DNA of 64,000 nucleotides from IMG/VR virus record IMGVR_UViG_3300022200_000019, positions 148,918 to 212,917 of that record; one strand, given 5' to 3'. Position numbers and translations under genes: made by a program. Positions 11,770-62,611 of the stretch are shown here, piece after piece (within the stretch, counting starts at the first letter, position 1; the number at the start of each line of letters is the position of its first letter). Under the pieces are notes generated by a model. The model saw only the letters and a program-made list of their open reading frames with translations, had not been told where the DNA came from and did not search any database.

Positions 11770-11795
11770 TAACTATCTAGACTGCAACAAAAATT

Positions 11796-11828: not shown

Positions 11829-11833
11829 GTATT

Positions 11834-12394: not shown

Positions 12395-12395
12395 T

Positions 12396-12938: not shown

Positions 12939-12949
12939 TACATAATTAT

Positions 12950-14911: not shown

Positions 14912-14919
14912 ATATTTTT

Positions 14920-15273
14920 ATGTTAAAATTAGTCAAAACGCCAAAGAAAAAGAAGCCAACAGATTGTACATTTGAAAAGCCAGTTGACAATCAAAAAACA
15001 GCAGTTAAAATGTTAATGTGCTGTAACAGTAATAACAGAGAATATGTAATTGGCCCAGATGTAGGTTTAGATTTAAATGTATTGGTAACAAAAACAAAAC
15101 CAAATTATTATTTCAATCCGGCTATAGTTGATAATGGTGTGCAATATCAAGATTACTTAGGTAACACAATGCACACAGATACAATAACAGAAGCAATGCA
15201 AGAAGCATTAACAAGACTTGCAGGAACTAGAAGAACCAGGAAAAAAACGGATGCAAATCAATCCAGAAATTGA
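14920..15273 (+). CDS. Degenerate peptide-deformylase-like protein
   Basis: GPDVG..VLV..YFNPAI echo PDF motifs, but HExxH is replaced by QEALT. Confidence 0.35.
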   Translation: MLKLVKTPKKKKPTDCTFEKPVDNQKTAVKMLMCCNSNNREYVIGPDVGLDLNVLVTKTKPNYYFNPAIVDNGVQYQDYLGNTMHTDTITEAMQEALTRLAGTRRTRKKTDANQSRN

Positions 15274-32918: not shown

Positions 32919-34249
32919 GAGCTCGTGAATTTATCGTAGAATATAAACGCGACATTACCATGAAAAACTGGTACGACAAGATCTTACGGCAACAAATGGT
33001 CGATAAAACCTACACCACACACGCTCAAAATGAAATCAGAGATTGGCTGGAAAAACGTGCTCGAGGAGAACTAACTCAACTTGAACAAGAGTTGTTAGAT
33101 CAATCAGTCGAAATGATAGTAAGACAATTTGAATCTGCAGATCCAAGTCCAAACAAACAGTATGTACAATGGATGTTGCGTATTTGGACCAATCCAAATG
33201 GTGTTGGCAGAATCGAAGATGTTACGTCCACAACAGCAGAAATGCTACACAAGTACCACGAACTAAAACAACGCAATCGTTTGCCTATTGACATTCGCGA
33301 CATTAACCAGGTTAAGGATATGCGAACACTGGAAAAGTTGCACGATGATGTGGATCGTTTATATGCATTACTAGATAAAGATAAAATAGCAGCAATGCCA
33401 AAAGGCTCTGCTCGTGAAGTATATAACGGACCAGATTTTAGACTTATCGTTCCAGAAGATGAAGCAGCCGCTTGTTATTATGGCCAAGGAACACGCTGGT
33501 GTACGGCAGCAACCAAGGGTCATAATATGTTTGATCACTATAGTAAGGCTGGCCCTATCTACATTCTCATTCCTAAAAAGCCAGAGTATGAAGGTGAAAA
33601 ATATCAATTACACGGCGCATCACGCCAATCAATGGATGAACGAGATCAGCCATACTATATTGGTAATTTACTTGGCAGATTCCCTGAGCTAAAAGAAATA
33701 TTATTTTCTACTGATGATTTTTATAGTTGGGTTGAGATAATGCCGGATGCTTTTGTTGAGGATGGCGTTGCTACCTGGAATGCGTATGCTGCGAAACATT
33801 TTAAAGAATGGGGTCTAACACAAGTATTGACTGGTTGGACGCGAACTGCTAAGAATCGCGGCGAGATTGTGGATGTACAAAAAACCTGGGAAAAGGTTAG
33901 AAAAGTATTGCTTGACTTGCTAGCAAATAGCGAAGTTTCAGTAGCAGACTTTTATGATGCTGCTACACAGACGCACATCAAAGGCGATACTGGTGCTACA
34001 GATGCTGAAAATGAGTTTGCTCGAATACTTTCATATGCGTGGAAGTATAACCTGATAGAAGCGTTAAAAGCCGGTTATCTGGGTGTGAATGCTAAGGTTA
34101 GTTTAGAACATCCTGAATGGGATATTACAGTTCGTGTAATAGATTCTGAAGCGAACGCCTGGAAAGATTCCACTGCCGAGTGGAGCAATGACGAGGGCTG
34201 GGAATTCTCCATTAATGATCCCGAAGATACTCGCTACAATGAGGACTAA
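32915..34249 (+). CDS. WCTA-motif family paralogue 2
   Basis: MRAREFIVEYKRD; DPSPNKQY; AACYYGQGTRWCTA; EGEKYQLH. Confidence 0.8.
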   Translation: MRAREFIVEYKRDITMKNWYDKILRQQMVDKTYTTHAQNEIRDWLEKRARGELTQLEQELLDQSVEMIVRQFESADPSPNKQYVQWMLRIWTNPNGVGRIEDVTSTTAEMLHKYHELKQRNRLPIDIRDINQVKDMRTLEKLHDDVDRLYALLDKDKIAAMPKGSAREVYNGPDFRLIVPEDEAAACYYGQGTRWCTAATKGHNMFDHYSKAGPIYILIPKKPEYEGEKYQLHGASRQSMDERDQPYYIGNLLGRFPELKEILFSTDDFYSWVEIMPDAFVEDGVATWNAYAAKHFKEWGLTQVLTGWTRTAKNRGEIVDVQKTWEKVRKVLLDLLANSEVSVADFYDAATQTHIKGDTGATDAENEFARILSYAWKYNLIEALKAGYLGVNAKVSLEHPEWDITVRVIDSEANAWKDSTAEWSNDEGWEFSINDPEDTRYNED

Positions 34250-34251
34250 AT

Positions 34252-35568
34252 GTGAGAGCCAAAGAGTTTTTATTAGAATATAACAGAGACATCACCAAAA
34301 AGAACTATGGTGACAAGATTGTTCTGCGCTGGGGCGTGGGAGCTGTTAGCAGTGGATTAAGCATTCGCCGTGTACACGACAAGATTCTTGCTGGCGAACC
34401 ATTGGATGCCAACGAACAAAATGTTTATGATGAAGCAGTTGCTAACATTATTAACAAAGCAGAAATTGCTGACCCAACTCCAAACAAACAATATGTACAG
34501 TGGCTTGTTCGTGCGTGGATCAATAAACTGCTAAGACTTGCTGAAGATATTCTTTCATCAGGCAGTGAGTTTGTTAAAATGTGGCACGAGTTAAAAACTC
34601 ACCGTATGCTACCGCCAAATTACACAGACATTAACAGAATTAAAACACCGAGCGATTGGAATCAGGCCTGGGTGGATATTCGAGCAGCATACGAAAACTT
34701 CAAACCCAAGAAGCCAATGCCCAAAGGCAAGGCACGTGAACTGTTAAACAATGCGGAAGTAAGAATCGTTCGCCCAGAAAATGAAGCAGCGGCTTGCTAT
34801 TACGGACAAGGCACACAGTGGTGTACGGCTGCTACAGAAACACGCAACTTGTTTGATCATTATCACAAAGATGGCGATCTAAGTATCTTTATTCCTAAGA
34901 ATCCACGGTACGAAGGTGAAAAATATCAACTGTGGGTCAATAACGACACTGGTGGATATCAGTTAATGAACGAACAAGACGATCCACTTGAATACGGCCT
35001 AGAAGAACTAACAGACAGATTTAATACATTAACTTATGAGATTTTAGAAAAACTACATCCAGCACTAATGAAACATCCTGAATTTAACACTGAAGAATTT
35101 GAGTCAGTTAAACGGCAAATTGCTGTTAACCTATTCAAAAATGGATACTTCAAATTAGCATATAGCGATCTAATTAATATGCTTGATGATTCATTTGACG
35201 AATACGACAAAGATTCCATTAATTATATGAAAGAAATGTTTATGGAAATGGAAGCTGAAGTGTTGCGAGCTATTAACAATGTTGGATACGATGAACTCGC
35301 ATTTAATGATCCTGGTGTAACATTCCCTGAGTTACCCAATGCTGTATTTAGATGGCTTGAATACATGACTGATGACACCAACATGTGGGGCGATTGGGCT
35401 GACGACGAATATATGGTAGGCTTTATCAGCAACATTGAAGCCTGGTTTAACAGACAAACAAATTGGGACAAGCGTAATCAGAATCAAACTCTGATACCGT
35501 ACTACAGCATCAAACAAGACGAAAAAACTGGAAAGTGGGAAGTAGAGTACGAAGGCCCGTGGACATGA
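34252..35568 (+). CDS. WCTA-motif family paralogue 3
   Basis: GTG start, RAKEFLLEYNRD; DPTPNKQY; AACYYGQGTQWCTA; EGEKYQLW. Confidence 0.8.
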   Translation: MRAKEFLLEYNRDITKKNYGDKIVLRWGVGAVSSGLSIRRVHDKILAGEPLDANEQNVYDEAVANIINKAEIADPTPNKQYVQWLVRAWINKLLRLAEDILSSGSEFVKMWHELKTHRMLPPNYTDINRIKTPSDWNQAWVDIRAAYENFKPKKPMPKGKARELLNNAEVRIVRPENEAAACYYGQGTQWCTAATETRNLFDHYHKDGDLSIFIPKNPRYEGEKYQLWVNNDTGGYQLMNEQDDPLEYGLEELTDRFNTLTYEILEKLHPALMKHPEFNTEEFESVKRQIAVNLFKNGYFKLAYSDLINMLDDSFDEYDKDSINYMKEMFMEMEAEVLRAINNVGYDELAFNDPGVTFPELPNAVFRWLEYMTDDTNMWGDWADDEYMVGFISNIEAWFNRQTNWDKRNQNQTLIPYYSIKQDEKTGKWEVEYEGPWT

Positions 35569-36968
35569 GAGCAAACGATTTAATTTTTGAATACAAGCGT
35601 GACGTAACCGTAAAGAATTATACTGACAGACTGATTGATCGTATGATCAGCGATGGCAGTGTCGAACGTATGACGTTTGGCGGCAATGGATGGGGTTACA
35701 CCACAGATGATATGTTTGATATGGTTCGCGGCATTCAGTGGCAGAATCAACCGCCGTTGACTCCAGAAAAAGTAGAAGCAGCCAAGGAAATATTTGCGAG
35801 AGGTGCTATTACACAAATTGAGCAAGCAGATCCTACCAGTAAAAAAGCCTACACAGAATGGTTGGTAATGGCATATATCAACAGTATATTTGTGCGTTGG
35901 GAAGACATATTCTCAACTGGAACTGATTTCTTAGCAATGTATAACGACCTAAAGCAACGCAACTTATTTAATAAAGTCGATACTCTTAAAGCAGTATCAA
36001 ACATTAAACAAATCAACAATCGCGAAAGATTTAGATGGGCATATACTACAATTTCAAACGCACACGATTTTTATCTCGGTCAAACCACAGACATTGATCG
36101 CGGCGATGCTGAAGAAATCCACAACGGACCAGAAGTTCGTGTACTAAAAGTAAACGATCAAAAAGCAGCGTGTTATTATGGACGCGGCACAGAATGGTGT
36201 ACAGCAGCAACACGTTCTCGCAATATGTTTGATCACTATAACCGTACTGGAAACATATACATATTCATTCCTAAAAAGCCACAGCACGACGGTGAAAAAT
36301 ATCAGTTCTGGGCAGGCGACGATGGGCGCAACGTTGATATTCAACTAATGGACGAACACGACGAGCCAGTAGATTTTGAAACCTGGGACAATCGTTTTCC
36401 AGGATTGGGCATCAAATACTTGTATGATCTTGAACCTAAGGTATTGAGTCAGTTTGTTATGTTTAACCGAAAGCGATTTGATTATATCATAGCCGAAGTT
36501 GTTGAACTTTTACAAAACAACTGGAAATGGGATGTCGTTGCTGACTGGGAGCATGACGATGATTATTATTGGCAATGGTTGCGTGACGAAGGTTACATAG
36601 ATGACGAAGGCGACTTTGATGATGATAAAATGGAAAAAGACGGCATAAACTATCTAGAGTTTAACGACGATTTGCGCCGAGGACTAAACGACGTGTTTGA
36701 CGCTTTTGAAGAACTTACACCGTCAGAACTCAATAATTTTTATAGTGATGACAATGGTGGACCATTGGACTTCTACCGTATGATTGATACCTTAGGTGAC
36801 TGGATAGAAGATCAAGCCGGCAGTCACTATGAAAGTTTATTCAAAGATGCCGGTAATTTCATTGCCAATAATATTGGCAGTTACTCAGATAAGGAAGGTA
36901 ACTTTAAGGTAGATCATGTTGCTAATATTCGCGGTACACCTTATCTAGCGCATCCAGCTAGACGATAA
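35565..36968 (+). CDS. WCTA-motif family paralogue 4
   Basis: Start 35565 MRANDLIFEYKRD; DPTSKKAY; AACYYGRGTEWCTA; DGEKYQFW. Confidence 0.8.
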   Translation: MRANDLIFEYKRDVTVKNYTDRLIDRMISDGSVERMTFGGNGWGYTTDDMFDMVRGIQWQNQPPLTPEKVEAAKEIFARGAITQIEQADPTSKKAYTEWLVMAYINSIFVRWEDIFSTGTDFLAMYNDLKQRNLFNKVDTLKAVSNIKQINNRERFRWAYTTISNAHDFYLGQTTDIDRGDAEEIHNGPEVRVLKVNDQKAACYYGRGTEWCTAATRSRNMFDHYNRTGNIYIFIPKKPQHDGEKYQFWAGDDGRNVDIQLMDEHDEPVDFETWDNRFPGLGIKYLYDLEPKVLSQFVMFNRKRFDYIIAEVVELLQNNWKWDVVADWEHDDDYYWQWLRDEGYIDDEGDFDDDKMEKDGINYLEFNDDLRRGLNDVFDAFEELTPSELNNFYSDDNGGPLDFYRMIDTLGDWIEDQAGSHYESLFKDAGNFIANNIGSYSDKEGNFKVDHVANIRGTPYLAHPARR

Positions 36969-51204: not shown

Positions 51205-51932
51205 TGCGAAAATTAATAATTGCAGGAAGTTCTTGGTCAGCTGGCACTTGGAAATTTGAGGAGCCAAACATCTATGCGCTGGATGAACCAGGTCTACAAT
51301 TACTATCAGAAAAATACAACGTAATTAACCTCAGTCGCGGCAGATCAAGTAACTGGCAATCTCTAAACACAATTATAAATTATTTTAACCATATCAGTGA
51401 CGAGTTGTTCGATGACACAGATGTTTTACTAGGTCAAACAGATATGTTCCTAGACAAAATGAGCAATTTGTTTGATGTTGACTATTCTGATTTATACAAA
51501 AGGGCTGTGGATTTTGAGAATTTTTACTTGTCTGCGGCAGAATTATTTTATTACAAATTGGATGCTATTTCCAAAACTATTAAAAAACCAATCCATATCA
51601 TCGGAGAATCATCTGATGTAGATGTTAATTTGTTGCATTCAATTACAGATAGAGTAAACGTAATATGTAGTAGTTGGGTAAAACTATTTAAAACAGATCA
51701 TCATGAATCGTTGATTCCGTTGGTAATAAATAAAAATTTTCTTCCAACAGCAAAAAAGAACCAACGACTTGATATTGCCATGCAAGGTACTGAGTATTCA
51801 GACTTAAATTTTAAAGAATTTATGAAATTACAAGAATCTGAATATATGGGAAATTTTATCGGTGATTTTCATCCAACGTCAAGTGGACACGACTTAATGT
51901 CCAGAAAAATTTTGTCTTATTTCGATGTTTGA
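51204..51932 (+). CDS. SGNH/GDSL-like hydrolase
   Basis: IAGSSWSAG, NLSRGRSSN, DFHPTSSGH. Confidence 0.55.
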   Translation: MRKLIIAGSSWSAGTWKFEEPNIYALDEPGLQLLSEKYNVINLSRGRSSNWQSLNTIINYFNHISDELFDDTDVLLGQTDMFLDKMSNLFDVDYSDLYKRAVDFENFYLSAAELFYYKLDAISKTIKKPIHIIGESSDVDVNLLHSITDRVNVICSSWVKLFKTDHHESLIPLVINKNFLPTAKKNQRLDIAMQGTEYSDLNFKEFMKLQESEYMGNFIGDFHPTSSGHDLMSRKILSYFDV

Positions 51933-52536
51933 CACAATACTTAAATTTGAAAACGTACTGGCTGAATACACAAATGCTCCGTATGCAGTTATGACTGACT
52001 GCTGCACACATGCAATTGAGTTATGCTTACGATACCAACAAAGTACGGAGCATCTAGATCACGTAGAGTTTACTGCATACACATACCTAAGTGTTCCAAT
52101 GACCATGCATAAGCTCGGAATTAACTATGACCTGCATGATGAATACTGGATCGGCGAATATCCAATTCATGGTACACAAATTTGGGACAGTGCCAGACGT
52201 TTAGAACGCAATATGTACCGCACAGGCACCATGCAGTGTTTGAGTTTTGGTTATTCTAAACCCATTGAAATTGGTCACGGCGGTGCTATACTGTTAGACA
52301 ACGAAGCAGCGTACAATAAACTAATTCGCATGCGCTATGATGGCCGCGACCTAGATATTAGTCCATGGTCGGCGCAGGTAATGTTTGAAGTTGGTTATCA
52401 TTATAGACCAACAGTAGAAGATGCTGAGCGTGGACTAGAATTACTAGAAAAATATAAAAACAAAAACAACACAAATCCTGTATATGTACAATATCCAGAC
52501 TGTAGATCTATTACTATAAATAAAAATGTTACATAA
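51925..52536 (+). CDS. Short DegT/DnrJ-type PLP aminotransferase
   Basis: DCCTHAIELCL, WDSA, SFGYSKP..GGAIL, RMRYDGR, GYHY. Confidence 0.75.
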   Translation: MFDTILKFENVLAEYTNAPYAVMTDCCTHAIELCLRYQQSTEHLDHVEFTAYTYLSVPMTMHKLGINYDLHDEYWIGEYPIHGTQIWDSARRLERNMYRTGTMQCLSFGYSKPIEIGHGGAILLDNEAAYNKLIRMRYDGRDLDISPWSAQVMFEVGYHYRPTVEDAERGLELLEKYKNKNNTNPVYVQYPDCRSITINKNVT

Positions 52537-52550
52537 CGGTAACAACCTGA

Positions 52551-52579
52551 TTGACAACAACGTGTTAATCTTGTATAAT
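52551..52579 (+). promoter_or_regulatory. Consensus sigma70 promoter of folE-queD
   Basis: TTGACA-N17-TATAAT. Confidence 0.85.
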
Positions 52580-52614
52580 ATCAATATTAAATCCGTGTAA
52601 GGAAGGGGTATAAA

Positions 52615-53295
52615 ATGAGTTTTAATAAAACAAAAACCGATCCTGTTCTGGGTCGTGAAGTTCATGAATGGTTAGTTAAATGCGGGGTCGAAACACCTGT
52701 TGAAGATATGGGCATCGATCGCAAAGACAAAATCGAAATCATTGAAAGACATTTTGCTGAAATTATGCGAACCATGGGGTTGGATCTAACTGATGACAGT
52801 CTGATGGAAACGCCCAAACGTGTCGCGAAAATGTATGTCAACGAAATATTTTGGGGTTTGGACTATGAAGCATTTCCGAAGTGTACTACTGTAGATAACA
52901 AAATGTCATATGATGAAATGGTTATCGAAACTGGTATTAACGTACAGAGCAACTGTGAACACCATTTTGTGGTGATTGATGGTCGAGCAACTGTTGCGTA
53001 TATTCCAGACAAGGTTGTGCTTGGGCTGAGTAAAATGAATCGCATCGTAGAATATTTCAGCAAACGTCCACAAATTCAGGAACGTTTAACTGAGCAAGTT
53101 TATCATGCACTGCAATACATCCTGGGAACAGACAACGTCGCTGTACTAATCGACGCACAACACTATTGCGTCAAGAGTCGTGGCGTTGAGGATGTAGGTT
53201 CTAGTACCATTACCAGCAAACTAGGTGGTGTATTCAAATCAGACCCAAGTGCTCGCGCAGAGTTCTTGGCAATTGCTCGTGATAATTGCAAATAA
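52615..53295 (+). CDS. folE: GTP cyclohydrolase I
   Basis: ETPKRVAKMY, SNCEHHF, GLSKMNR, RPQIQERLT, HYCVKSRG. Confidence 0.95.
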   Translation: MSFNKTKTDPVLGREVHEWLVKCGVETPVEDMGIDRKDKIEIIERHFAEIMRTMGLDLTDDSLMETPKRVAKMYVNEIFWGLDYEAFPKCTTVDNKMSYDEMVIETGINVQSNCEHHFVVIDGRATVAYIPDKVVLGLSKMNRIVEYFSKRPQIQERLTEQVYHALQYILGTDNVAVLIDAQHYCVKSRGVEDVGSSTITSKLGGVFKSDPSARAEFLAIARDNCK

Positions 53296-53305
53296 GGAGA
53301 ATAAT

Positions 53306-53893
53306 ATGGGCGTTAAGGTAAAATCAACGAAAGTATATAGATACTTGCCTTGTGGTCACGCACAGTTCTTTGATCTGGAACCAGATGGTAGTCCGGGAGA
53401 GTGTGCTAGCGTACACGGATATGATCGTTCAGTAGAACTCACATTTGCTGGTGACATTGACGACATGGGATGGATTGTTCCATTTGGTGAACTCAGTGCC
53501 GTGAAAAAGTTTATTGAATATTACTTTGATCACGTAACTGTGTTACCAGCAAACGATCCACGCTTGGATCAAATTACATCAGAAATGAAACAGCCTGGTG
53601 GTATTCTTGGTACTGTACGTATCCTACCAAGCGGTGTATCAATGGAAATGAGTTCACTATTCATTTGGGAATGGGTTAACCATTATATCTTTGATATCAC
53701 AGATGGTCGTTGCTATGTAGAAGGTGTGCGTGTATACGAACACGATCGCAATGACGCAATGATTGAAGTGGATCGCGAAACTGCTATCAAAGATGCAAGT
53801 AAGAAGATTGCGGCAGGTGAAGAAATCCTTCCACTCATCGACGAATGGTATTGGGAAGCACCCAAAGACGCAGTAGCAAGGATTGAAGGGTGA
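53306..53893 (+). CDS. queD: 6-carboxytetrahydropterin synthase
   Basis: CGHAQ..C..VHGYDR, VPFGEL, YFDH, VYEHDRN; AGGAG SD before ATG 53306. Confidence 0.85.
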   Translation: MGVKVKSTKVYRYLPCGHAQFFDLEPDGSPGECASVHGYDRSVELTFAGDIDDMGWIVPFGELSAVKKFIEYYFDHVTVLPANDPRLDQITSEMKQPGGILGTVRILPSGVSMEMSSLFIWEWVNHYIFDITDGRCYVEGVRVYEHDRNDAMIEVDRETAIKDASKKIAAGEEILPLIDEWYWEAPKDAVARIEG

Positions 53894-54609: not shown

Positions 54610-57600
54610 ATGGACTTTACAAAAAGTAAAATTGCTATCGCTGTTGCTACTGCTGCTACCCTCACTGGGTGTGGTGGAGGTGGTGGCGGTCCGCAAACAC
54701 GCCCAAGTCCAATTATCGAATGGGGCAACGGCGTATACGATCCTTGGTTGTTAACTTCATCAACAGACACTACAGTTAACGACACCACCGAAGTCGACTG
54801 TCGCAATGACAACTACGAGCGTAATGTTTGGTGGGAAAAGATCATCGATGGTGTTCGTACAGGCATCAAAGGCGATTTAATTCGCGTCGAAACTAAAACT
54901 GAGGAAGTGTGTGTAAACACTACTGTTTCCCGTTATGAGGATGTTGAGACTAGCGAAAGTACAGTTACTCGCGGCACAACAACTGTTGAAACAACGTATA
55001 CCGATACTACAAGCGTTACCACTGATGTTAGTGGTAACACGGTTACAGAAGTGTGGCGCACATATACAGACACAACTACTACGCCTGTAACTACAACCAC
55101 AGTAACTACCACCACACGCACAACTTATTATAGCAACGGTACAAGTTCAAGCGAAGTAATCGATTCACAAACAACCCAGGAGACAAGCAATGATGTTACC
55201 AGTTCCGCCAGAGAAGCTGAACTCGTTAGCAGAACTGTTACTGCAAATCTTATTAGCAGCACACTAAGTTCCGTAGACGAAACCACAACCACTAACGGTA
55301 CGCCAACATCTGTTACAACTTATACAGATGAAACTCGTACCTTAGAGGATGCAAACGGTAGTACAGTTACAGAAGTGTGGCGTGTATATACTACAACTGT
55401 TACCACTCCTGTAACTACTACCGTAACTACAACTGTAACACGCATTGATACATATTCTGATGGTAGAACTATTCCAGAAACTGTAAGTGTTACACCAGTT
55501 TCTTCAACTGCTAATACAACATCTACTTCTACCACAGAAGAATTGTTGTCTAGTACTACAACACCTAATGTTGTAAGCACATCAACAAGTAGTGCCGACT
55601 CAGTTACTACATCAACTGGTACTGCTACAACAGAAACAACATATGTTGATGATGTGCGCACCAGTTTGGACGCTAACGGTAGTACTATAACTGAGACTTG
55701 GCGAGTATATACGGACACCACAACCACTCCAGTAACAACTACAACGGTCACTACGATTACTCGCACTACTGTTTATACCGACGGTACATCCGTTACTGAA
55801 CCTGTTAGTGTTACAAGTGCAGATTCTACAGAAAATACAGTAACTACTTCTACTCGCGAAGAATTACAATCACGTACAGTAACACCAAATGTTGCTAGTA
55901 CTGCTGATTCATCCAGCGATGTAACGTCAACCTCAACAGGGACTGCTACTGTTACTACAACCTATGTAGATGATGTACGTACTAGTTTGGATGCTAATGG
56001 CAGCACAGTTACAGAAACGTGGCGTGTACACACAGACACAACTACCACTCCAGTAACAACAACAGTTACAACTACAACAACTCGCACCACAACCTACACA
56101 GACAGTTCTACTACCTCCGAAGTGATTGATGTTAGCAGCACTGAATCGGTATCCAATACTGTTACAACTGCTACCCGAGAAGAACTATTATCTAGTGTAA
56201 CCACGCCAAATGTTGCTGGTACATCAGACTCAACCAGTTCGAGTACTACTACAACTGTAAGTGATCCTGTGTTTGATCGCACAGTTACTAACACAGACAC
56301 ACGTCCCGATGGTGTTTGGACGTATTATTACGATTATTGGATTACTACAACTACCGCAGTAACTACAGTAACTACTACTCGCACTACAACATATACAAAC
56401 GGCACAACTAATTCAGAAGTAATTGATGTTACAACAACCGAAAATGTTACAACTGCTGAAACATACACTACTCGTATTGTTGCTCCAGAAGCAACACCAG
56501 CAGATCCTTCGGCTCCGGAATCAAATGCGGGTACTGTAATAACACAGGACAATGCTCCTACATTGGATTATGATCCAGCTACATACAATTATTTGACGTA
56601 TTACAATAGCAATTATGTAGGTACTCCTACTGCTGTTGATAGTAACGATCCGGCAGATTTTGCTACAGTTGAAGCAGACAATGGCGCCGTGCTCGATGTA
56701 AACGCAAACTATGCGTATGCTCGAGGTTGGACTGGCAAAGGATCAACTGTAATGATTATGGATTCTGGTATTGACCAAGATCACCCGGAGTTTGAAGGTA
56801 AAATTAAGTATTTGTGGGATGCTGGTTACGATACTCCATATGAAGATACCAACGGGCATGGTACCCATGTTGCTGGTATTGTAGCAGCAAACAAAAACGA
56901 TACGGGTATGCATGGTATTGCATACGATGCTGATCTTGCTATTGCTCGTATCACTGATACTGGATATGGCAACTATTACGCTATTGCAGCACTAGATTGG
57001 GCTAAACAATACGAAGATATTGTTGCTGCTAACCTAAGTTCAAATACTGTATATCCAAGTTCGTATCGCAACGCAATGACTTATCAAGGTGATGGTGTTT
57101 ATACCAATAGCGATGCTACATATGGTGGGGTCAATTATTACAACCTAGAAAACCCAGCAACTTGGGCAGCAGCAATGCCAAGCGAACTGGTACTTACTGT
57201 GAGTGCTGGTAACCAAAGTTTAGGTTACGTTCAAAATCCTGCTACATTTGCTACCGCAGTAGACGCAGACGGTAACTTATTGTTTGACAGACGTATGCTT
57301 GTTGTTGGTAATTGGAACACAAGCACACAATCAGTAGACGGAGCAAAATCAGGACACGTTTGTAAGGATTATACTGTAACTTGTAATGACCCATACTTGA
57401 CCAAAGACTTTTATATTCTTGCTCCGGGTTCGCAAATTAATTCTACCTACCTAAATGGTGAATACAAGAGCATGAGTGGTACGTCAATGGCAGCACCTGT
57501 TGTGGCTGGTGCAGTTGCTATTGTACACCAACTGTGGCCGTATATGAAAGGATCAAATATTGCTCAATTGTTGTTGCAAACAGCGAATAAAACTATCACC

Positions 57601-58479
57601 GGATACGATGAAAATACTCACGGTCAGGGTTTGCTAGACTTAGATCAAGCAACACGCCCAGTAGGTGATTTGGGTATTTCGCTAACTGGACGTACAGGAT
57701 CCGCTGTACAGATTTCTGGTAGTATTAGTGTAAACGGTGTTAATGATGCTGTATTAAGCAATATCTCAGCAGTAGACGACTTTGATCGAGACTTTGTTGT
57801 TGACTTGTCAGGTGCTAAAGTTGATCGCAAGATTAGCGTAGAATATGCAGAGCGTCAAAAGGACAATAACAGTTGGGCAGCAAGTATGTCTAATATTTCA
57901 ACCCGTAAGTCTGAATCAGTTCGTTTTGGTGCATCAGAAAATGCCAAAAACTTTGCAATTGGTTATGATCATAAAATCTTTGACACCAATGCTACAGTAG
58001 GCGTAAGTTATACCAAATCTGATTCAAATCCATGGATTGATATGTCTGGCATGTGGGGCGAAGTTAAAGGTGCTCGCACTACAGAACTTAACTTGACATA
58101 TGACTTCTCAGACAATGCATGGGTACAAGCAGGCGCAATGGATACACGCACTGACTTTAGCTCAGGACTTGTTACAGACGTTAGCAACGTGCGTTCTGTG
58201 TACGCAGTAGCAGGATATGACGCAGATAACTATAGCGTGTATGCTGGTATTAAACCTTACGCAGTAGATGGTTCAGTTACTATGCGACTGCCAACAAGCG
58301 TTGATACCGCAGGCGTTATGCACTACGACACAGTAAGCAGCAACATTCGTTCAACGGTAGAAGGGTATGCAGGGTTTAAGCACAACTATACCAAGGACAA
58401 TCATTCTACTACGTTTGTAGGCGTTGTTGATTCGGATGGTGATAAGCATTTAGGATTTAACTATCGCTACAAGTTCTAA
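54610..58479 (+). CDS. Lipoprotein subtilisin (S8) autotransporter with Thr-rich repeat stalk
   Basis: LTGC lipobox; triad IMDSG / GHGTHVAG / GTSMAAP; beta-strand-rich C-terminus ending YRYKF. Confidence 0.85.
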   Translation: MDFTKSKIAIAVATAATLTGCGGGGGGPQTRPSPIIEWGNGVYDPWLLTSSTDTTVNDTTEVDCRNDNYERNVWWEKIIDGVRTGIKGDLIRVETKTEEVCVNTTVSRYEDVETSESTVTRGTTTVETTYTDTTSVTTDVSGNTVTEVWRTYTDTTTTPVTTTTVTTTTRTTYYSNGTSSSEVIDSQTTQETSNDVTSSAREAELVSRTVTANLISSTLSSVDETTTTNGTPTSVTTYTDETRTLEDANGSTVTEVWRVYTTTVTTPVTTTVTTTVTRIDTYSDGRTIPETVSVTPVSSTANTTSTSTTEELLSSTTTPNVVSTSTSSADSVTTSTGTATTETTYVDDVRTSLDANGSTITETWRVYTDTTTTPVTTTTVTTITRTTVYTDGTSVTEPVSVTSADSTENTVTTSTREELQSRTVTPNVASTADSSSDVTSTSTGTATVTTTYVDDVRTSLDANGSTVTETWRVHTDTTTTPVTTTVTTTTTRTTTYTDSSTTSEVIDVSSTESVSNTVTTATREELLSSVTTPNVAGTSDSTSSSTTTTVSDPVFDRTVTNTDTRPDGVWTYYYDYWITTTTAVTTVTTTRTTTYTNGTTNSEVIDVTTTENVTTAETYTTRIVAPEATPADPSAPESNAGTVITQDNAPTLDYDPATYNYLTYYNSNYVGTPTAVDSNDPADFATVEADNGAVLDVNANYAYARGWTGKGSTVMIMDSGIDQDHPEFEGKIKYLWDAGYDTPYEDTNGHGTHVAGIVAANKNDTGMHGIAYDADLAIARITDTGYGNYYAIAALDWAKQYEDIVAANLSSNTVYPSSYRNAMTYQGDGVYTNSDATYGGVNYYNLENPATWAAAMPSELVLTVSAGNQSLGYVQNPATFATAVDADGNLLFDRRMLVVGNWNTSTQSVDGAKSGHVCKDYTVTCNDPYLTKDFYILAPGSQINSTYLNGEYKSMSGTSMAAPVVAGAVAIVHQLWPYMKGSNIAQLLLQTANKTITGYDENTHGQGLLDLDQATRPVGDLGISLTGRTGSAVQISGSISVNGVNDAVLSNISAVDDFDRDFVVDLSGAKVDRKISVEYAERQKDNNSWAASMSNISTRKSESVRFGASENAKNFAIGYDHKIFDTNATVGVSYTKSDSNPWIDMSGMWGEVKGARTTELNLTYDFSDNAWVQAGAMDTRTDFSSGLVTDVSNVRSVYAVAGYDADNYSVYAGIKPYAVDGSVTMRLPTSVDTAGVMHYDTVSSNIRSTVEGYAGFKHNYTKDNHSTTFVGVVDSDGDKHLGFNYRYKF
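54960..56480 (+). repeat. Coding repeat, about 321-nt (107-aa) period, 4 copies plus a partial
   Basis: DDVRTSLDANG at 55648 and 55969 (321 nt apart); recurring TVTE(V/T)WR.YT.TTTTPVTT. Confidence 0.85.
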
Positions 58480-58500: not shown

Positions 58501-58785
58501 ATGCGAGCAACAGAATTAATAAGACACGTTCTAGATTTAATTGACAATATTGAGGCAACAAAAGGCCCCGATGTTGCAGTTAGTGTTACTAACATCACAA
58601 AAGAAGAACCCGAACCCGAAGCAGAATACGCAAACGAACCCAACGAACAGTATGCTCCGGTTAGTGCTGTGACTACTGATATGGGCGGCGGACCTAATAA
58701 GCCTAAACATCCTGCGGACCTTAGAGGCGATTCTCAAAGTCTTTATCCTACCATGCAGTATGATCCATACCGAGGACTACGATAA
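58501..58785 (+). CDS. Small late protein with MRATELI leader
   Basis: ATAAATA at 58487-58493. Confidence 0.65.
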   Translation: MRATELIRHVLDLIDNIEATKGPDVAVSVTNITKEEPEPEAEYANEPNEQYAPVSAVTTDMGGGPNKPKHPADLRGDSQSLYPTMQYDPYRGLR

Positions 58786-59888
58786 TGGCTACGGTAACAG
58801 TACAAAGTTTATTAAACACGGCTGTTTATGATTCGTATACTAGTATTACACTTACAACCAAAACTGTAGCACAACTTAAAGCAGATATTCAAACTGCTAC
58901 CGGTGTCGATGTTGACTGGTTTGATCTTGTATTAAACGAAACTGTACTTGTTGAAGGTAACACACTTTCCGTAGAAGGCGTCCAAGACGGCGACGCATTG
59001 CGCACACATAACAAAATTGCTCGTTTGTCGGATCGTGAAACTAAACAAAAAGCAAAATTAGCACTTGCTGCGCTTGATAGAATTGCCAGTGGCAAGTCAG
59101 GTGAATATGACATCACAGAATTACCAACACAGTATCGTGGTGATGTTGCTGTAGACAATCCTAATACCGGAGGATTATTAGAAGGTCGTCCGTGGTCAAC
59201 TAGCGGTATTGAAGAAACAAACTTGGTTATGTACTTAGATGGTCTTATTACATCTAGCGGTACTACCGTATATGATCAATCACCATTGGGCAACAATGCC
59301 ACACTGGTTGGGCCAACACACGATTCTTCAAACGGTTACTTTACGTTTGACGGTTCAAATGATTATATTCGTTCGTCAGATTTTAATGGTACGGCTGTTT
59401 ACAGCCCAGATACTTTCTCAGCAGGTGCGTGGGTATACCCAACAGCAGCAGGTGTGGTTGTAAGTATTGCCGACGCTAACTCGCCAGCAGGAGCAAGTTA
59501 TCATTACAGTAGTTTAGAAATGGTTGAGTCTGGTGGCAATCCAGTTCCGTACTTTGGATTATGGAACGGCACTAGTATCACATCGGATTCTGGAACAGCA
59601 CTAAGTTACAACACTTGGTATCATATGGTAATAACCTATAATGGAACAACACTAAAAGGCTATATCAACGGCAGCGAAGTTGCCAGTGCCAGTGTTACAT
59701 ACGATAGTCCTGCTGATGATGCTACCGGAGCACAATACTTCTTGTTTGGTGCGTCGGATATTACAAATATGGGCGATGGCACATATTTTAATGGACGTAT
59801 GGGCGAGATTCGGTTGTATAGTGCCGCACTATCGCCAACCGAAGTTGCGGATAACTATAACTTTACTAAATCACGTTACGGATACTAA
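58785..59888 (+). CDS. Ubiquitin-like domain + linker + LamG/concanavalin-A lectin (probable virion protein)
   Basis: Residues 27-73 align ungapped to ubiquitin 22-68; C-terminal FTFDGSNDY, WYHMVITY, YINGS, FNGRMGEIRLY. Confidence 0.75.
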   Translation: MATVTVQSLLNTAVYDSYTSITLTTKTVAQLKADIQTATGVDVDWFDLVLNETVLVEGNTLSVEGVQDGDALRTHNKIARLSDRETKQKAKLALAALDRIASGKSGEYDITELPTQYRGDVAVDNPNTGGLLEGRPWSTSGIEETNLVMYLDGLITSSGTTVYDQSPLGNNATLVGPTHDSSNGYFTFDGSNDYIRSSDFNGTAVYSPDTFSAGAWVYPTAAGVVVSIADANSPAGASYHYSSLEMVESGGNPVPYFGLWNGTSITSDSGTALSYNTWYHMVITYNGTTLKGYINGSEVASASVTYDSPADDATGAQYFLFGASDITNMGDGTYFNGRMGEIRLYSAALSPTEVADNYNFTKSRYGY

Positions 59889-61771
59889 TGGGTAACTTAA
59901 ACGACAACTCAACCAGTTATGTTCACAGTTATGAACCAAACACCAATGACCTCACAATGGCAATGGACTACAATGACGCAGGCGAACCTGCTATCCGCGT
60001 TAAGTCATATATTGAAGGGGATATCACAATTGAAGGCGACGTTAACATACCCGGTTCTGTTGAAATCAGTAATGACATAGGAAATCCTATTCCAGTAAGT
60101 GGTACAATTACAGCATTACAAGGAACAGATCCTTGGACTGTAGATGGCACTGTTAATATTGGCAACGAAGTAAGCATCAACGACGGCGGCAATAGCATTA
60201 CTGTAGATGTCAACGGAAATGTAACTGTTGTTCAAGGAACAACGCCTTGGACTGTAGATGGAACTGTTAATATTGGCACTATGCCTAATGTAACACTTAA
60301 CCAACCAATCGCAGTTACAGACAACGGCAGTAGTCTAACAGTAGATGGAACTGTGGCAGTCAGCAACTTCCCTGCTACACAGACAGTAGATGGAACTGTG
60401 AATATTGGCAACGAAGTAGCAATCAATGATGGTGGCAACAGCATCACAGTTGATGGAACTGTGGGCATCACTGGCGATGTAAATGTAACACAAGGAACAA
60501 CGCCTTGGACCGTGAGCGGCACAGTTACCGTACAAGAAACAGGATTTAACAGCACAGGTAATATTTCTGGATCTAGTGATGCATTCGGTAGGTTGCGTAT
60601 ATCGCAGCCACTTACACTTTTTGATAGTAGTCACAGGTACAGAGACAACAACCTATTTGCAGAAAGCACCAGCGGCGGTGGCTCTAGTTCTTTTAACGCA
60701 AATGCTGGTCTGATTGAAATGGATGTAGGCACAGCCAGCGGCGATGAAGTGCTTCGCGAATCAACAAAGGTAATGAGTTATCAACCTGGTAAGTCGTTGT
60801 TGATTATGAGTACATTTGTTTTTAATGAAGCAAAAACAAATCTTAGACAGCGTGTGGGATATTTCGGTAGTAAAAATGGAATGTATCTTGAACTGGACGA
60901 TAATGATCTGTGTTTTGTAGAACGCAGCAGCGTTACTGGTAGTGTCACTGAAACTAAGATTCCGCAGAGCCAATGGAATGTTGATACCATGGACGGATCT
61001 GCCGGCGCTGGCAATGTTAGCGGCATTACTCTTGATATTACCAAGGCGCAGATATTATGGATGGATATTGAATGGCTAGGACTAGGAAGTTCAAGAATGG
61101 GTTTTGTAATCAACGGGCAGTTTGTGGTTGCTCATGTTTTCCATCATGCTAATCTAATAGACAGTACATATATTACTACTGCTAGTTTGCCATTGAGACA
61201 AGAAATAACCAACACCGGTACAACAACAAGTGCAAGTAAGTCAAAACAAGTTTGCTCAACTGTTATAAGTGAAGGCGGCTATGAACTGCGTGGGCTTCAA
61301 CAAGCCGTGGGTACTCCTATAGCAACACCTCGAGATTTAGCACTTGCAGATACATACTATCCAATCATATCTATTAGGTTGAAGACTAGCCCAGACAGAC
61401 TAGATGCTATCGTTATTATGACTGCAATGAGTCTAATCGGTACAAGTAACAACAGTAACTACAACTGGCGTGTAGTAGCCACTGGAACAACAACAGGCGG
61501 CTCATGGGTAAGTGCTGGCATAGACAGTGCAGTAGAATATAACATAACAGGCACCAGTCACAGCGGCGGGCGTATTCTCGCTAGTGGATGGTTTCAAGGA
61601 AGTAATCAAGGTAGTTCAGTTGTTGATATTTTGAAAGAAGCACTATTTAAGTTTCAACTAGAGCGTGATAGTTTTGTGCCTGAGCCATACGAGCTGACAC
61701 TGGTTGTTGCTACAGACAATGCAGGTTCTGATATGTACGCTACTATCGACTGGGAAGAAATCAGTCGATAA
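59888..61771 (+). CDS. Virion structural/fibre-like protein with TVDGTV repeats
   Basis: Repeated PWTVDGTVNIG and DGGNSITVD; globular C-terminus starting DAFGRLRIS. Confidence 0.65.
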   Translation: MGNLNDNSTSYVHSYEPNTNDLTMAMDYNDAGEPAIRVKSYIEGDITIEGDVNIPGSVEISNDIGNPIPVSGTITALQGTDPWTVDGTVNIGNEVSINDGGNSITVDVNGNVTVVQGTTPWTVDGTVNIGTMPNVTLNQPIAVTDNGSSLTVDGTVAVSNFPATQTVDGTVNIGNEVAINDGGNSITVDGTVGITGDVNVTQGTTPWTVSGTVTVQETGFNSTGNISGSSDAFGRLRISQPLTLFDSSHRYRDNNLFAESTSGGGSSSFNANAGLIEMDVGTASGDEVLRESTKVMSYQPGKSLLIMSTFVFNEAKTNLRQRVGYFGSKNGMYLELDDNDLCFVERSSVTGSVTETKIPQSQWNVDTMDGSAGAGNVSGITLDITKAQILWMDIEWLGLGSSRMGFVINGQFVVAHVFHHANLIDSTYITTASLPLRQEITNTGTTTSASKSKQVCSTVISEGGYELRGLQQAVGTPIATPRDLALADTYYPIISIRLKTSPDRLDAIVIMTAMSLIGTSNNSNYNWRVVATGTTTGGSWVSAGIDSAVEYNITGTSHSGGRILASGWFQGSNQGSSVVDILKEALFKFQLERDSFVPEPYELTLVVATDNAGSDMYATIDWEEISR

Positions 61772-62104: not shown

Positions 62105-62611
62105 ATGAAAGTAGAAAAAAATAAAGTCTTTTACACTTGGCAAGATGTACAGAGCATGACTCTGGATCTTATTCGCAGCATTGACGCTGCCGAATGGCGC
62201 CCAGATTATGTTGTTGGACTAACACGTGGAGGATTACACGCTGCTAACTTGATTAGTCAATGGTATAATATTCCTATGGAAACATTACGTGTTAGTTTGC
62301 GTGATCACGCTAACACAGAATCTAATGCGTGGATGGCAGAAGATGGTTTACAAACAGGAATGAAAATCCTCATTGTAGATGACATTAATGACTCCGGTGC
62401 TACAATTAACTGGATCAAGGATGATTGGCACTCAAGTGTATACAACGGCAATCGTGAAGCATGGGGCAACAACATTCGTTTTGCTACACTTGTAGACAAT
62501 AGTGCCTCAGATGCAGATGTTGAATATTGTTGTGTAGAAATTAATAAGTTAGATGATCCAGACCTGTGGATCGTCTTCCCTTGGGAAGATTGGTGGTTAA
62601 CACATGAGTGA
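62105..62611 (+). CDS. Type I purine phosphoribosyltransferase (Gpt/Hpt-like)
   Basis: VVGLTRGGL; PRPP loop ILIVDDINDSGAT; WIVFPWE. Confidence 0.9.
   Translation: MKVEKNKVFYTWQDVQSMTLDLIRSIDAAEWRPDYVVGLTRGGLHAANLISQWYNIPMETLRVSLRDHANTESNAWMAEDGLQTGMKILIVDDINDSGATINWIKDDWHSSVYNGNREAWGNNIRFATLVDNSASDADVEYCCVEINKLDDPDLWIVFPWEDWWLTHE

What the first reader, a model, noticed from the sequence alone, without database searches (positions are those of the whole stretch)
58785..59888. Ubiquitin-like domain fused to a LamG lectin in a probable virion protein
Seen: residues 27-73 (TVAQLKADIQTATGVDVDWFDLVLNETVLVEGNTLSVEGVQDGDALR, 58863-59003) align without gaps to ubiquitin 22-68, with 15/47 identities by hand count including KAxIQ, G35, L43, L50 and GxTLS. 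There is no C-terminal GG; the chain continues into a linker (..LPTQY..DNPN.GGL..GRPW) and LamG. Established: bacterial Bil-type defences conjugate ubiquitin-like proteins onto phage tail fibres. Inference: a phage-borne Ubl could be a decoy or inhibitor of bacterial E1/E2/JAB enzymes, or a structural docking domain; either would be unusual.
Basis: partly seen in the sequence, partly recalled or inferred. Interest (0 to 1): 0.8.

Follow-up and report, generated by a model that had tools for sequence, protein, structure and literature searches.

The report
Ubiquitin-capped lectin adaptor of jumbo phage
A large aquatic phage encodes a protein whose first 76 residues are a true ubiquitin-family domain, permanently fused to a phage-specific anchor segment and a sugar-binding head; it belongs to a widespread, undescribed three-gene cassette that probably builds a virion adhesin and is unlikely to be a decoy against bacterial ubiquitin-like defences.

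Summary
ORF 58785-59888 (367 aa) has three parts:
- an N-terminal ubiquitin-fold domain (residues 1-76; AlphaFold pLDDT 94; top 50 PDB fold hits all ubiquitin, TM 0.80-0.84);
- a conserved anchor module with no Pfam match (76-137);
- a LamG lectin (147-365).

The query alone is marginal against Pfam ubiquitin (22.8 bits, cut-off 25.4). Its family profile hits only ubiquitin-family proteins. One homolog (P0010) is 58% identical to ubiquitin, and its remainder matches normal family members.

The conserved core of the family is the anchor module, not the Ubl:
- It defines 441 representative clusters.
- It gives 208 IMG/VR loci, many on 190-400 kb contigs, and one locus in 185,579 species' genomes.
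- About 75% of members lack the Ubl.
- The C-terminal head is swapped (LamG, PA14/GLEYA, ILEI, Calx-beta) or absent.

The gene is the middle of a translationally coupled cassette: small acidic ORF, then (Ubl-)anchor(-lectin), then a large repeat-containing structural protein.

The Ubl has no C-terminal Gly-Gly, matched no PADLOC defence model, and no JAB/E1/E2 gene was detected nearby. I read it as a built-in interaction or assembly domain on a virion adhesin adaptor. The closest analogue is lambda gpI. The decoy idea is not supported. Function is inferred, not shown.

The parts
58501..58785 (+). Small acidic ORF (94 aa), first gene of the cassette. It has an N-terminal amphipathic helix (MRATELIRHVLDLID), an acidic low-complexity middle and a conserved C-terminal motif (GGGPNKPKHPADLRGDSxSLYP). 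Its stop overlaps the start of the Ubl gene (TAATG).
   Evidence: ORF. Homologs lie 0-3 nt upstream of the family gene in 33/37 unique Ubl-bearing loci against 8/33 Ubl-less loci. No Pfam, PHROG or PADLOC match. An RNA-library piece at 58719-58869 spans the junction.
58785..59888 (+). The reported gene: a 367-aa Ubl - anchor - LamG protein.
58785..59012 (+). Ubiquitin-family beta-grasp domain, residues 1-76 (strands 2-7, 15-21, 46-50, 71-76; helix 28-39). There is no terminal Gly-Gly.
   Evidence: Models. Foldseek top 50 all ubiquitin, TM 0.80-0.84. Profile hits to the ubiquitin family only. Pfam PF00240 at 22.8 bits for the query, 30.1 for P0004 and 58.2 for P0010.
59010..59195 (+). Conserved anchor (linker) module, residues 76-137. 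It contains the NxIxxL start, helix 84-101 (RQxAKLxLA..R), YDITELPTQY (108-117), DNPN, and GLLEGRPW (130-137), which is predicted disordered. It is the family-defining element.
   Evidence: Invariant Q88, L113, P114, Y117, G134, R135, P136, W137. pLDDT below 50 at 128-140. 441 representative clusters. No Pfam match.
59223..59879 (+). LamG / concanavalin-A-like lectin jelly-roll, residues 147-365. This is the swappable head.
   Evidence: PF13385 E=1.8e-23. ConA-like fold matches. Replaced by PA14/GLEYA, ILEI, Calx-beta, SPRY or nothing in relatives.
59888..61771 (+). Partner gene (627 aa), start overlapping the stop of the Ubl gene. It has a conserved N-terminal motif (NSTxYxH..EPN..L..AMxY..G.P..RV), about 5 beta-rich repeats (about 60-230) and a C-terminal phrog_1645 'virion structural protein' domain (192-625).
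   Evidence: 74% identity to the HMO-2011 structural protein, 63-67% to cyanomyoviruses. The conserved N-terminus lies immediately downstream of family genes in 30/37 Ubl-bearing loci. Virus-only family with no solved relative.

Best explanation
The gene encodes a modular accessory protein of a phage adhesin or fibre cassette. Shown:
- The N-terminal 76 residues are a ubiquitin-family beta-grasp domain that cannot be conjugated. It has no free C-terminus and no Gly-Gly, so it is a built-in 'ubiquitin-domain protein' type of Ubl.
- Residues 76-137 are a phage-restricted module conserved across hundreds of large-phage genomes.
- The C-terminus is a LamG lectin that relatives exchange for other carbohydrate-binding or adhesion folds, or omit.
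- The gene is translationally coupled to a small acidic ORF upstream and to a large repeat-containing structural protein downstream.

Inferred:
- The helix plus the disordered ELPT...GRPW motif dock the protein onto the partner's conserved N-terminus or onto the virion.
- The lectin head binds a glycan on the host surface or on particles.
- The Ubl, present in a clade-structured minority and strongly linked to the complete cassette, acts as a protein-protein interaction or assembly-control cap on the adaptor's N-terminus. It is not a conjugated tag or an enzyme decoy.
- The family's Ubl was probably captured from a eukaryote-type ubiquitin.
For: - Fold and homology of the Ubl.
- P0010 is 58% identical to ubiquitin over 62 aligned residues (E=6e-18) and occurs in two independent metagenomes. 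The rest of it is ordinary family sequence.
- The type-2 Ubl is homologous to type-1 (hhalign 93%).
- Modularity: many homologs start exactly at residue ~76, and others keep residues 1-137 but carry PA14/GLEYA or ILEI.
- Census of the 150 best representatives: LamG 37, PA14/GLEYA 22, ILEI 14, Calx-beta 2, SPRY 1, ubiquitin 13. 114/150 lack the Ubl.
- Phage-restricted: 208 IMG/VR loci against 1 in GTDB genomes.
- 40 genes end right at GRPW, and the partner gene follows within 0-4 nt.
- Cassette association after removing duplicates.
- The GRPW motif is invariant yet predicted disordered, as expected of a docking motif.
- The LamG part matches the C-terminus of cyanophage virion structural proteins such as S-PM2p176.
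- The partner's domain is annotated as virion structural and lies among neck and terminase genes in S-RIM8. Tail genes or the large terminase lie near the cassette in other phages.
- Cyanomyovirus virion proteomics found structural proteins of unknown function proposed as missing fibre proteins (PMC2984593).
Against: - No direct evidence that this protein, or any family member with the anchor module, is in a virion.
- In the window the cassette sits among auxiliary genes (FolE, QueD, an S8 protease, a phosphoribosyltransferase) and not in a recognisable tail module.
- The anchor-partner interaction is inferred from synteny only. No fusion of the two was found, and no complex prediction could be run.
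- Headless forms (anchor only, 66-70 aa) show that the module has a role beyond anchoring a lectin.
- The Ubl/cassette association is not phylogenetically independent. The profiles for the small ORF and the partner may also be less sensitive in the more divergent Ubl-less loci.
Confidence: 0.5

Rival explanations
1. Removable assembly checkpoint, as in lambda gpI. The Ubl keeps the adaptor in a pre-assembly state and a peptidase clips it off once the adaptor has engaged its partner, leaving a mature protein that starts at about N76.
For: - Lambda gpI has an N-terminal Ubl that gpK's deubiquitinase-like domain removes to enforce stepwise tail-tip assembly (PMC12908700; prediction in PMC1779556).
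- Ubl-less homologs begin exactly at the junction: M-A-A-N-G-I-S-x-L corresponds to N76-K-I-A-R-L. Cleavage would therefore recreate the common N-terminus.
Against: - There is no Gly or Gly-Gly at the end of the beta-grasp, and the junction is R-T-H-N-K-I.
- No JAB/MPN, OTU or papain-like peptidase was detected in any window ORF of at least 120 aa.
- None recurs beside 8 diverse Ubl-bearing cassettes. That census lists only the 25 commonest families, so single occurrences can be missed.
- No sequence relation to gpI (hhalign 0.8%).
- Only 64 kb of a genome of at least 213 kb was examined.
Confidence: 0.17
2. Expression and stability tag. Like ubiquitin fused to ribosomal proteins eL40 and eS31, the compact Ubl protects a short, largely disordered adaptor from misfolding or from N-terminus-dependent proteolysis, and has no specific partner.
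For: - The anchor module is short, and its key motif is predicted disordered.
- Ubl+anchor proteins of only 136-142 aa exist in which the Ubl is the only folded domain.
- These phages repeatedly encode ClpS, ClpX, ClpA/B-like and HSP20 proteins near the cassette.
Against: - Most family members do without the Ubl.
- Type-1 Ubls keep an invariant surface-loop motif (VQSLLNTA) and invariant Y18, W45 and R73. That points to a specific binding surface, not a passive tag.
- The Clp link is circumstantial.
Confidence: 0.13
3. Anti-defence decoy. The phage Ubl binds the E1, E2 or deubiquitinase of a host Ubl-conjugation defence (Bil, or CBASS Cap2/Cap3 type) and blocks it.
For: - Bil systems conjugate a Ubl to the phage central tail fibre (bioRxiv 10.1101/2023.09.04.556158, abstract), so Ubl biology at tail structures is a real battleground.
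- The Ubl's patchy, clade-structured distribution with about 12 gains or losses is compatible with an arms-race accessory.
Against: - It cannot be activated: it has no free C-terminus and no Gly-Gly.
- No match to any of 5027 PADLOC defence models at E up to 1.
Known anti-defence proteins are typically small free-standing proteins (background knowledge).
- The host and its defence repertoire are unknown.
Confidence: 0.07
4. Not a virion component. The cassette encodes intracellular or released lectin-type proteins, for example ones that modify or bind host envelope glycans during infection, and the 'structural' labels of relatives are misleading.
For: - The window neighbourhood consists of auxiliary genes.
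- In HMO-2011 the partner homolog lies among hypothetical and auxiliary genes.
- 'Virion structural protein' labels are mostly propagated annotations.
Against: - There is no obvious signal peptide (the N-terminus reads MATVTVQSLL).
- The LamG part is homologous to the C-termini of very large cyanophage proteins labelled virion structural.
- The partner gene sits in the neck/terminase block in S-RIM8.
- A conserved anchor with swappable heads is the hallmark architecture of receptor-binding proteins.
Confidence: 0.1

Closest known systems
Lambda tail assembly protein I (gpI, TAPI family) with gpK (JAB + NlpC/P60)
   Same: An N-terminal ubiquitin-fold domain is fused to a phage morphogenetic or structural protein and sits next to a host-specificity or fibre gene. 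It works (in lambda) or may work (here) in ordered assembly.
   Different: - The gpI Ubl is ThiS/MoaD-like. It has a conserved terminal Gly and a Gly-rich linker and is cleaved by the neighbouring JAB peptidase.
- Here the Ubl is of the ubiquitin-proper type (PF00240) and has no terminal Gly.
- No JAB was detected in the window or as a recurrent neighbour.
- No sequence relation was detected (hhalign 0.8%).
- The downstream modules are different.
Eukaryotic ubiquitin-domain proteins (integral UBL domains: Dsk2/ubiquilin, Rad23, ISG15-type tandem Ubls)
   Same: A non-cleaved N-terminal ubiquitin-family domain serves as a protein-interaction module. These are among the best profile hits.
   Different: Those proteins act in the eukaryotic proteasome and autophagy pathways. 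Here the domain sits on a bacteriophage protein with a lectin head, and the eukaryotic partners are absent.
Virus-encoded ubiquitins of eukaryotic viruses (baculovirus v-ubi, giant-virus ubiquitins, pestivirus ubiquitin insertions)
   Same: A virus captured a ubiquitin-family gene. These are the next-best hits in the viral fold library after the family's own members.
   Different: Those viruses infect eukaryotes that have a ubiquitin system, and most of their ubiquitins keep Gly-Gly. This is a bacteriophage, its domain cannot be conjugated, and no cognate enzymes were detected.
Bacterial defence Ubls (Bil/BilA, Bub, CBASS Cap2-linked conjugation)
   Same: A beta-grasp domain involved in phage-bacterium interactions at tail structures.
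   Different: Defence Ubls are host-encoded, free-ended, sit in operons with E1, E2 and DUB genes, and are conjugated to phage proteins. This one is phage-encoded, fused, without such enzymes nearby, and has no PADLOC match.
Modular phage receptor-binding proteins and fibre adaptors, and cyanomyovirus virion proteins with C-terminal LamG (e.g. S-PM2p176)
   Same: A conserved N-terminal attachment element carries exchangeable C-terminal carbohydrate-binding heads. The LamG part is homologous at 29-35% identity.
   Different: The anchor module (NGISxL...RQxAKL...ELPTxY...GRPW) matches no Pfam family and was not matched in the GenBank phage collection searched. Headless and Ubl-capped versions exist. 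Trimeric fibre features were not shown.

Membership tests
Ubiquitin family (Pfam PF00240, beta-grasp) | beta-beta-alpha-beta-beta...beta ubiquitin fold | tested here: met
   Model pLDDT 94.3. Top 50 PDB fold hits are all ubiquitin, TM 0.80-0.84, rmsd 1.2-2.0 A.
Ubiquitin family (Pfam PF00240, beta-grasp) | Sequence score above the Pfam gathering threshold (25.4 bits) | tested here: inconclusive
   The query scores 22.8 bits, E=8.1e-5, just below the cut-off. Orthologous domains pass: P0004 at 30.1 bits and P0010 at 58.2 bits. The family profile without P0010 hits only the ubiquitin family.
Conjugatable ubiquitin-like modifiers (Ub, ISG15, SUMO, BilA) | Free or processable C-terminal Gly(-Gly) after the beta-grasp | tested here: not met
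   The sequence after beta5 reads R-T-H-N-K-I-A-R-L and continues into the anchor module. No Gly is conserved at the junction in 18 type-1 sequences.
Conjugatable ubiquitin-like modifiers (Ub, ISG15, SUMO, BilA) | Cognate E1, E2 or deubiquitinase genes in the neighbourhood | tested here: not met
   Pfam detected no E1, E2, JAB or OTU domain in any window ORF of at least 120 aa. None is recurrent in 8 other loci. The rest of the genome was not examined.
Lambda gpI / TAPI phage Ubl | Sequence relationship to the gpI N-terminal Ubl or to Pfam Lambda_tail_I | tested here: not met
   hhalign of profile A4 against lambda gpI gives probability 0.8%. No such Pfam hit at E up to 1.
Lambda gpI / TAPI phage Ubl | Adjacent JAB/NlpC-P60 peptidase (gpK) and conserved Gly at the Ubl end | tested here: not met
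   and the sequence at the junction.
Lambda gpI / TAPI phage Ubl | Ubl removed during assembly | not testable with these tools
   Needs proteomics or in vitro cleavage.
Bacterial anti-phage Ubl systems (PADLOC models) | Match to a defence-system Ubl model | tested here: not met
   No hit at E up to 1 for the query Ubl, the P0010 Ubl, the type-2 Ubl or the whole protein. The library dates from 2023 and may lack some Ubl models.
LamG / concanavalin-A-like lectin (PF13385) | Sequence and fold match | tested here: met
   83.8 bits, E=1.8e-23, full-length profile match. ConA-like jelly-roll fold hits at E about 1e-10.
LamG / concanavalin-A-like lectin (PF13385) | Carbohydrate binding | not testable with these tools
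   Needs a glycan array or binding assay.
Modular phage receptor-binding or adhesin proteins | Conserved N-terminal attachment module with exchangeable C-terminal binding domains | tested here: met
Modular phage receptor-binding or adhesin proteins | Presence in the virion | not testable with these tools
   Only propagated annotation of relatives is available.

The most novel reading that the evidence does not exclude
Aquatic large and jumbo phages captured a eukaryote-type ubiquitin and domesticated it as the N-terminal cap of a previously undescribed virion-adhesin cassette. There it acts as an assembly switch, a second and independent invention of the lambda gpI/gpK principle, or as a shield or inhibitor against host ubiquitin-like conjugation aimed at tail structures.
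Probability: 0.2. Interest if true: 0.8.

Novelty: new variant of a known kind. Interest (0 to 1): 0.6.

Why it matters
- **Rarity.** Ubiquitin-proper domains are hardly known in bacteriophages. The one studied phage Ubl (lambda gpI) is ThiS/MoaD-like.
- **Scale.** Here a PF00240-type domain occurs in dozens of lineages of large aquatic phages. One version is still 58% identical to eukaryotic ubiquitin, which points to gene flow from eukaryotes or their viruses into phages.
- **Timing.** Bacterial ubiquitin-like conjugation onto phage tails, and Ubl-controlled tail assembly in lambda, have both just been described. A second, unrelated Ubl-capped structural adaptor would test whether Ubl caps are a general device in virion assembly.
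- **New module.** The work also defines a phage-restricted anchor module and a three-gene cassette with swappable lectin heads. That is useful for annotating jumbo-phage 'dark matter' and for finding host-recognition genes.

Tried and rejected
- Megablast of the region against GenBank phages gave no match. A protein search found only the LamG half.
- PADLOC gave nothing.
- The PDB sequence search for the partner protein gave nothing meaningful.
- The first genome-collection scan with the broad linker alignment failed for lack of a conserved stretch. A tighter alignment worked.
- Programmed frameshift or read-through joining the short 'GRPW-stop' forms to a downstream lectin: rejected. The next gene has its own ATG 0-4 nt away and is the partner protein, not a lectin.
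- Linker-partner 'Rosetta-stone' fusions: none found.
- The I-T-E|L site in YDITELPT as a T4-type prohead-protease site, with the module as a capsid-targeting peptide: rejected. The Glu is not conserved, and lectin heads inside a capsid make little sense.
- The small ORF's N-terminal helix as a ubiquitin-interacting motif: no supporting pattern, and similar small ORFs accompany Ubl-less genes.
- The upstream S8 protease as the Ubl-processing enzyme: unlikely. It carries a lipoprotein-type signal and looks exported.
- P0010 as an assembly chimera: unlikely. It occurs in two independent samples and shares the family's two-residue longer beta1-beta2 loop.
- Structure-prediction jobs were exhausted, so no model of the partner or of any complex was made.
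Full report
**What is there.** The window holds an intact ORF at 58785-59888 (+), 367 aa.
- Pfam finds a full-length Laminin_G_3 domain at residues 189-355 (E=1.8e-23).
- Pfam also finds a sub-threshold ubiquitin match at residues 25-72 (E=8.1e-5, 22.8 bits against a 25.4-bit cut-off).
- The stop of a 94-aa upstream ORF overlaps the start codon (TAATG). The gene's own stop overlaps the start of a 627-aa downstream ORF.

**Is the ubiquitin likeness more than chance?** On the single sequence the evidence is marginal: single ubiquitin chains score E about 0.2-1, and the low E-values for polyubiquitin are inflated by its repeats. Three independent lines settle it.
1. Family profiles.
   - A profile of 18 orthologous N-terminal domains hits only ubiquitin-family chains in the PDB: ISG15 1.2e-6, Dsk2 UBL 7.7e-6, ubiquilin, a viral ubiquitin 3.8e-4, ubiquitin 1.4e-3.
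   - That profile deliberately excluded the most ubiquitin-like homolog, P0010.
   - With P0010 and the second subtype included, single ubiquitin scores about 1e-10 over the whole domain.
2. The bridging homolog P0010.
   - P0010 (363 aa) matches ubiquitin at E=6e-18, with 36/62 identities (58%).
   - It scores 58.2 bits on PF00240.
   - From residue ~72 onward it is ordinary family sequence, nearly identical to P0004.
   - It was assembled in two independent metagenomes.
   - It shares the family's two-residue longer beta1-beta2 loop, so it is a bridge and not a chimera.
3. Fold.
   - AlphaFold2 gives a confident model: pLDDT 94.3 and pTM 0.84 for residues 1-80, and the same topology in the full-length model at pLDDT 89.4.
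   - Foldseek returns ubiquitin for all top 50 PDB matches (TM 0.80-0.84, rmsd 1.2-2.0 A).

A second Ubl subtype in the family carries a 7-residue insert and has no Pfam hit, but it is homologous to the first (hhalign 93%, E=2.8e-7).

**The Ubl is not the core of the protein.** A search of 5.8 billion proteins returned 337 homologs, all metagenomic. Mapping them on the query shows a modular build.
- Residues 1-75 are optional. Many homologs of 293-312 aa begin with M-A-A-N-G-I-S-x-L, which corresponds to N76-K-I-A-R-L.
- Residues 76-137 are the most conserved part. Q88, L113, P114, Y117, G134, R135, P136 and W137 are invariant.
- The C-terminus varies: LamG, PA14/GLEYA, ILEI or unknown.

A profile of the 76-145 module was then searched exhaustively against 1.84 billion representatives.
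- It found 441 clusters, 342 of them at E up to 1e-10.
- Of the best 150, 114 have the module at the extreme N-terminus, 25 have a Ubl in front, and 11 have an extra domain inserted between the helix and the ELPT...GRPW motif.
- The Pfam census of these 150 is: LamG 37, PA14/GLEYA 22, ILEI 14, ubiquitin 13, Calx-beta 2, SPRY 1, Gly-rich 1. Apart from ubiquitin and the glycine-rich domain, these are carbohydrate-binding or adhesion folds.
- The module itself has no Pfam match.
- In the model it is a helix (84-101), two short strands, and a disordered stretch (128-140, pLDDT below 50) that coincides with the invariant GLLxGRPW. That is the signature of a motif that folds on a partner.

**Where it occurs.**
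- The window is the last 64 kb of a 212,917-bp IMG/VR contig (100% identity over 12,991 bp).
- The DNA polymerase is 42-50% identical to those of jumbo myoviruses such as Phosso, Atu_ph07, Vibrio 2.275.O and CBB.
- The same phage DNA is present in at least five freshwater or estuarine samples.
- The module was found in 208 IMG/VR loci, many on contigs of 190-400 kb.
- It was found once among 185,579 species' genomes, on an 18.6-kb contig of a Crocinitomicaceae MAG. The family is in practice phage-restricted.
- In the viral structure library the only phage hits to the Ubl model are two uncultured-phage members of this same family. Everything else is from eukaryotic viruses.

**The cassette.** I analysed 93 family genes in 94 loci.
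- Forty genes stop 1-4 residues after GRPW. They encode Ubl+anchor proteins of 136-142 aa or anchor-only proteins of 66-70 aa.
- The next gene starts 0-4 nt later with its own ATG. It is a homolog of the window's downstream ORF, recognisable by a conserved N-terminus (NSTxYxHPxEPNLLxLHxAMxYDxxGxPxxRV).
- After removing duplicates, 33/37 Ubl-bearing genes have the small acidic ORF immediately upstream, against 8/33 Ubl-less genes.
- 30/37 Ubl-bearing genes have the partner immediately downstream, against 13/33 Ubl-less genes.
- Some Ubl-less loci have a similar small ORF downstream instead.
- These counts are not phylogenetically independent. On a tree of 291 unique modules the Ubl state changes about 12 times, against about 82 for shuffled labels.
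- One metatranscriptome holds a 100%-identical piece that spans the junction between the small ORF and the Ubl gene. DNA carry-over cannot be excluded.

**The partner.**
- The 627-aa protein has the conserved N-terminus, about five beta-rich repeats and a C-terminal phrog_1645 domain (E=9e-145).
- That domain is 74% identical to the 'putative structural protein' of Puniceispirillum phage HMO-2011 and 63-67% identical to cyanomyovirus 'virion structural proteins'.
- In S-RIM8 the homologous gene lies between the neck genes and the large terminase.
- It has no solved relative, and its family is virus-only.
- The query's LamG part matches the C-terminal 220 residues of large cyanophage virion proteins such as S-PM2p176.
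- Cyanomyovirus virion proteomics found structural proteins of unknown function that were proposed to be the missing fibre proteins (PMC2984593).
- In another family member the cassette abuts a Phage_tail_C gene and a second LamG gene.
- The large terminase recurs near the cassette in 3 of 8 loci.

**How it most likely works.** This part is inferred.
- The helix and the GRPW motif dock the protein to the partner's N-terminus or to the virion.
- The exchangeable head binds a glycan.
- The Ubl has no free C-terminus and no Gly-Gly, so it is an integral interaction domain like those of Dsk2 or Rad23. It caps the adaptor's N-terminus and assists or times assembly.
- Within type-1 Ubls the beta1-beta2 loop (VQSLLNTA), Y18, W45 and R73 are invariant, which argues for a specific binding surface.

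**Closest known analogue.** Lambda gpI is a structural protein with an N-terminal Ubl. It was predicted in 2006 (PMC1779556), and a 2025 report says gpK's deubiquitinase-like domain clips the Ubl off as an assembly checkpoint (PMC12908700). This protein is not a member of that family:
- hhalign probability to gpI is 0.8%.
- There is no Gly at the junction.
- No JAB, E1, E2 or OTU domain was detected in any window ORF of at least 120 aa, and none recurs beside 8 other cassettes.

**The decoy hypothesis.**
- Bil systems do conjugate a Ubl to the central tail fibre (abstract).
- Against a decoy role: this Ubl cannot be activated and matches no PADLOC model. It is always fused to the anchor, sits in a structural-type cassette, and is dispensable in most of the family.
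- It is not excluded, because the host and its defences are unknown. I give it about 7%.

**Novelty.** Seven literature searches (and the jumbo-phage survey read) found no description of a ubiquitin-anchor-lectin phage protein, of the anchor module, or of the cassette. I class it as a new variant of a known kind: Ubl-capped phage structural proteins and virus-captured ubiquitins are both known. The features that look new are the ubiquitin-proper type, the near-eukaryotic P0010 version, the new anchor module and the cassette.

**Limits.**
- No experiment or proteome shows virion incorporation.
- No complex model could be run.
- Only 30% of the genome was examined.
- The hosts are unknown.

Noticed in passing
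P0010 (loci L001:9248-10339, L002:81-1172): A family member whose N-terminal domain is 58% identical to eukaryotic ubiquitin (MQIFV..., KAKIQDEDGI, GRTLSDYNIQ; E=6e-18), while the rest equals ordinary members. It occurs in two independent metagenomes. P0148, P0252 and P0233 share its '...YIKTSN' ending. This suggests capture of a eukaryote-type ubiquitin by phages.
   Followed up: partly
L016, L019, L021, L025, L033, L047 and about 35 more loci: Many family genes end 1-4 residues after the invariant GRPW: Ubl+anchor proteins of 136-142 aa and anchor-only proteins of 66-70 aa. These are headless versions, so the anchor module must have a function of its own.
   Followed up: partly
P0157 (452 aa, representative search): The Ubl is internal (residues 317-392), preceded by a 316-residue N-terminal region of unknown type and followed by the anchor. 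The protein is cut by the contig end.
   Followed up: no
window 54610-58479 (+): A 1289-aa Peptidase_S8 subtilase with a lipoprotein-type signal (…LTGC), about 600 residues of Thr-rich repeats, and a C-terminus ending ...GFNYRYKF like an outer-membrane beta-barrel or autotransporter. It is conserved upstream of the cassette in L007. This is an unusual phage gene. The barrel was not verified.
   Followed up: partly
window 31593-36968 (+): Four tandem paralogs of 438-477 aa. Their N-terminal 255-320 residues are 34-44% identical and their C-termini diverge. They have no Pfam hit. The pattern is that of a receptor-binding or fibre paralog array.
   Followed up: partly
window 547-17536: A dense block of host-like auxiliary genes:
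- radical SAM (547-1551, -)
- PhoH (1561-2271, -)
- TctA tricarboxylate transporter subunit (5060-6517)
- class-I glutamine amidotransferase (8871-9410)
- ammonium transporter (9515-10669)
- PstS-like binding protein (10813-11769)
- APS-kinase-like NTPase (13735-14160)
- DnaJ (14153-14911)
- ClpA/B-like ATPase (15218-17536)
   Followed up: partly
window 51925-53893 and 62105-62611: A DegT-like aminotransferase fragment, GTP cyclohydrolase I (FolE) and a 6-pyruvoyl-tetrahydropterin synthase (QueD-like) lie just upstream of the cassette. This gene set is typical of 7-deazaguanine DNA modification. A phosphoribosyltransferase lies downstream.
   Followed up: no
L003, L005, L011 and the 8-locus census: Phages carrying the cassette repeatedly encode their own ClpS, ClpX, ClpP or ClpA/B-like proteins and HSP20 within a few kb of it. 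A link between phage-encoded proteolysis control and the Ubl cap is conceivable but untested.
   Followed up: no
L013 (JBDNIA010000195.1, Crocinitomicaceae MAG): The only hit in 185,579 species' genomes is a Ubl+anchor gene on an 18.6-kb contig binned with a Bacteroidota MAG. It is either a mis-binned phage contig or a host clue.
   Followed up: no
window 58518-58869; 60573-61765: Metatranscriptome contigs match the small ORF and the junction with the Ubl gene at 100% (run X21). They match the partner's conserved domain at 95-99% (three other runs, probably relatives).
   Followed up: partly
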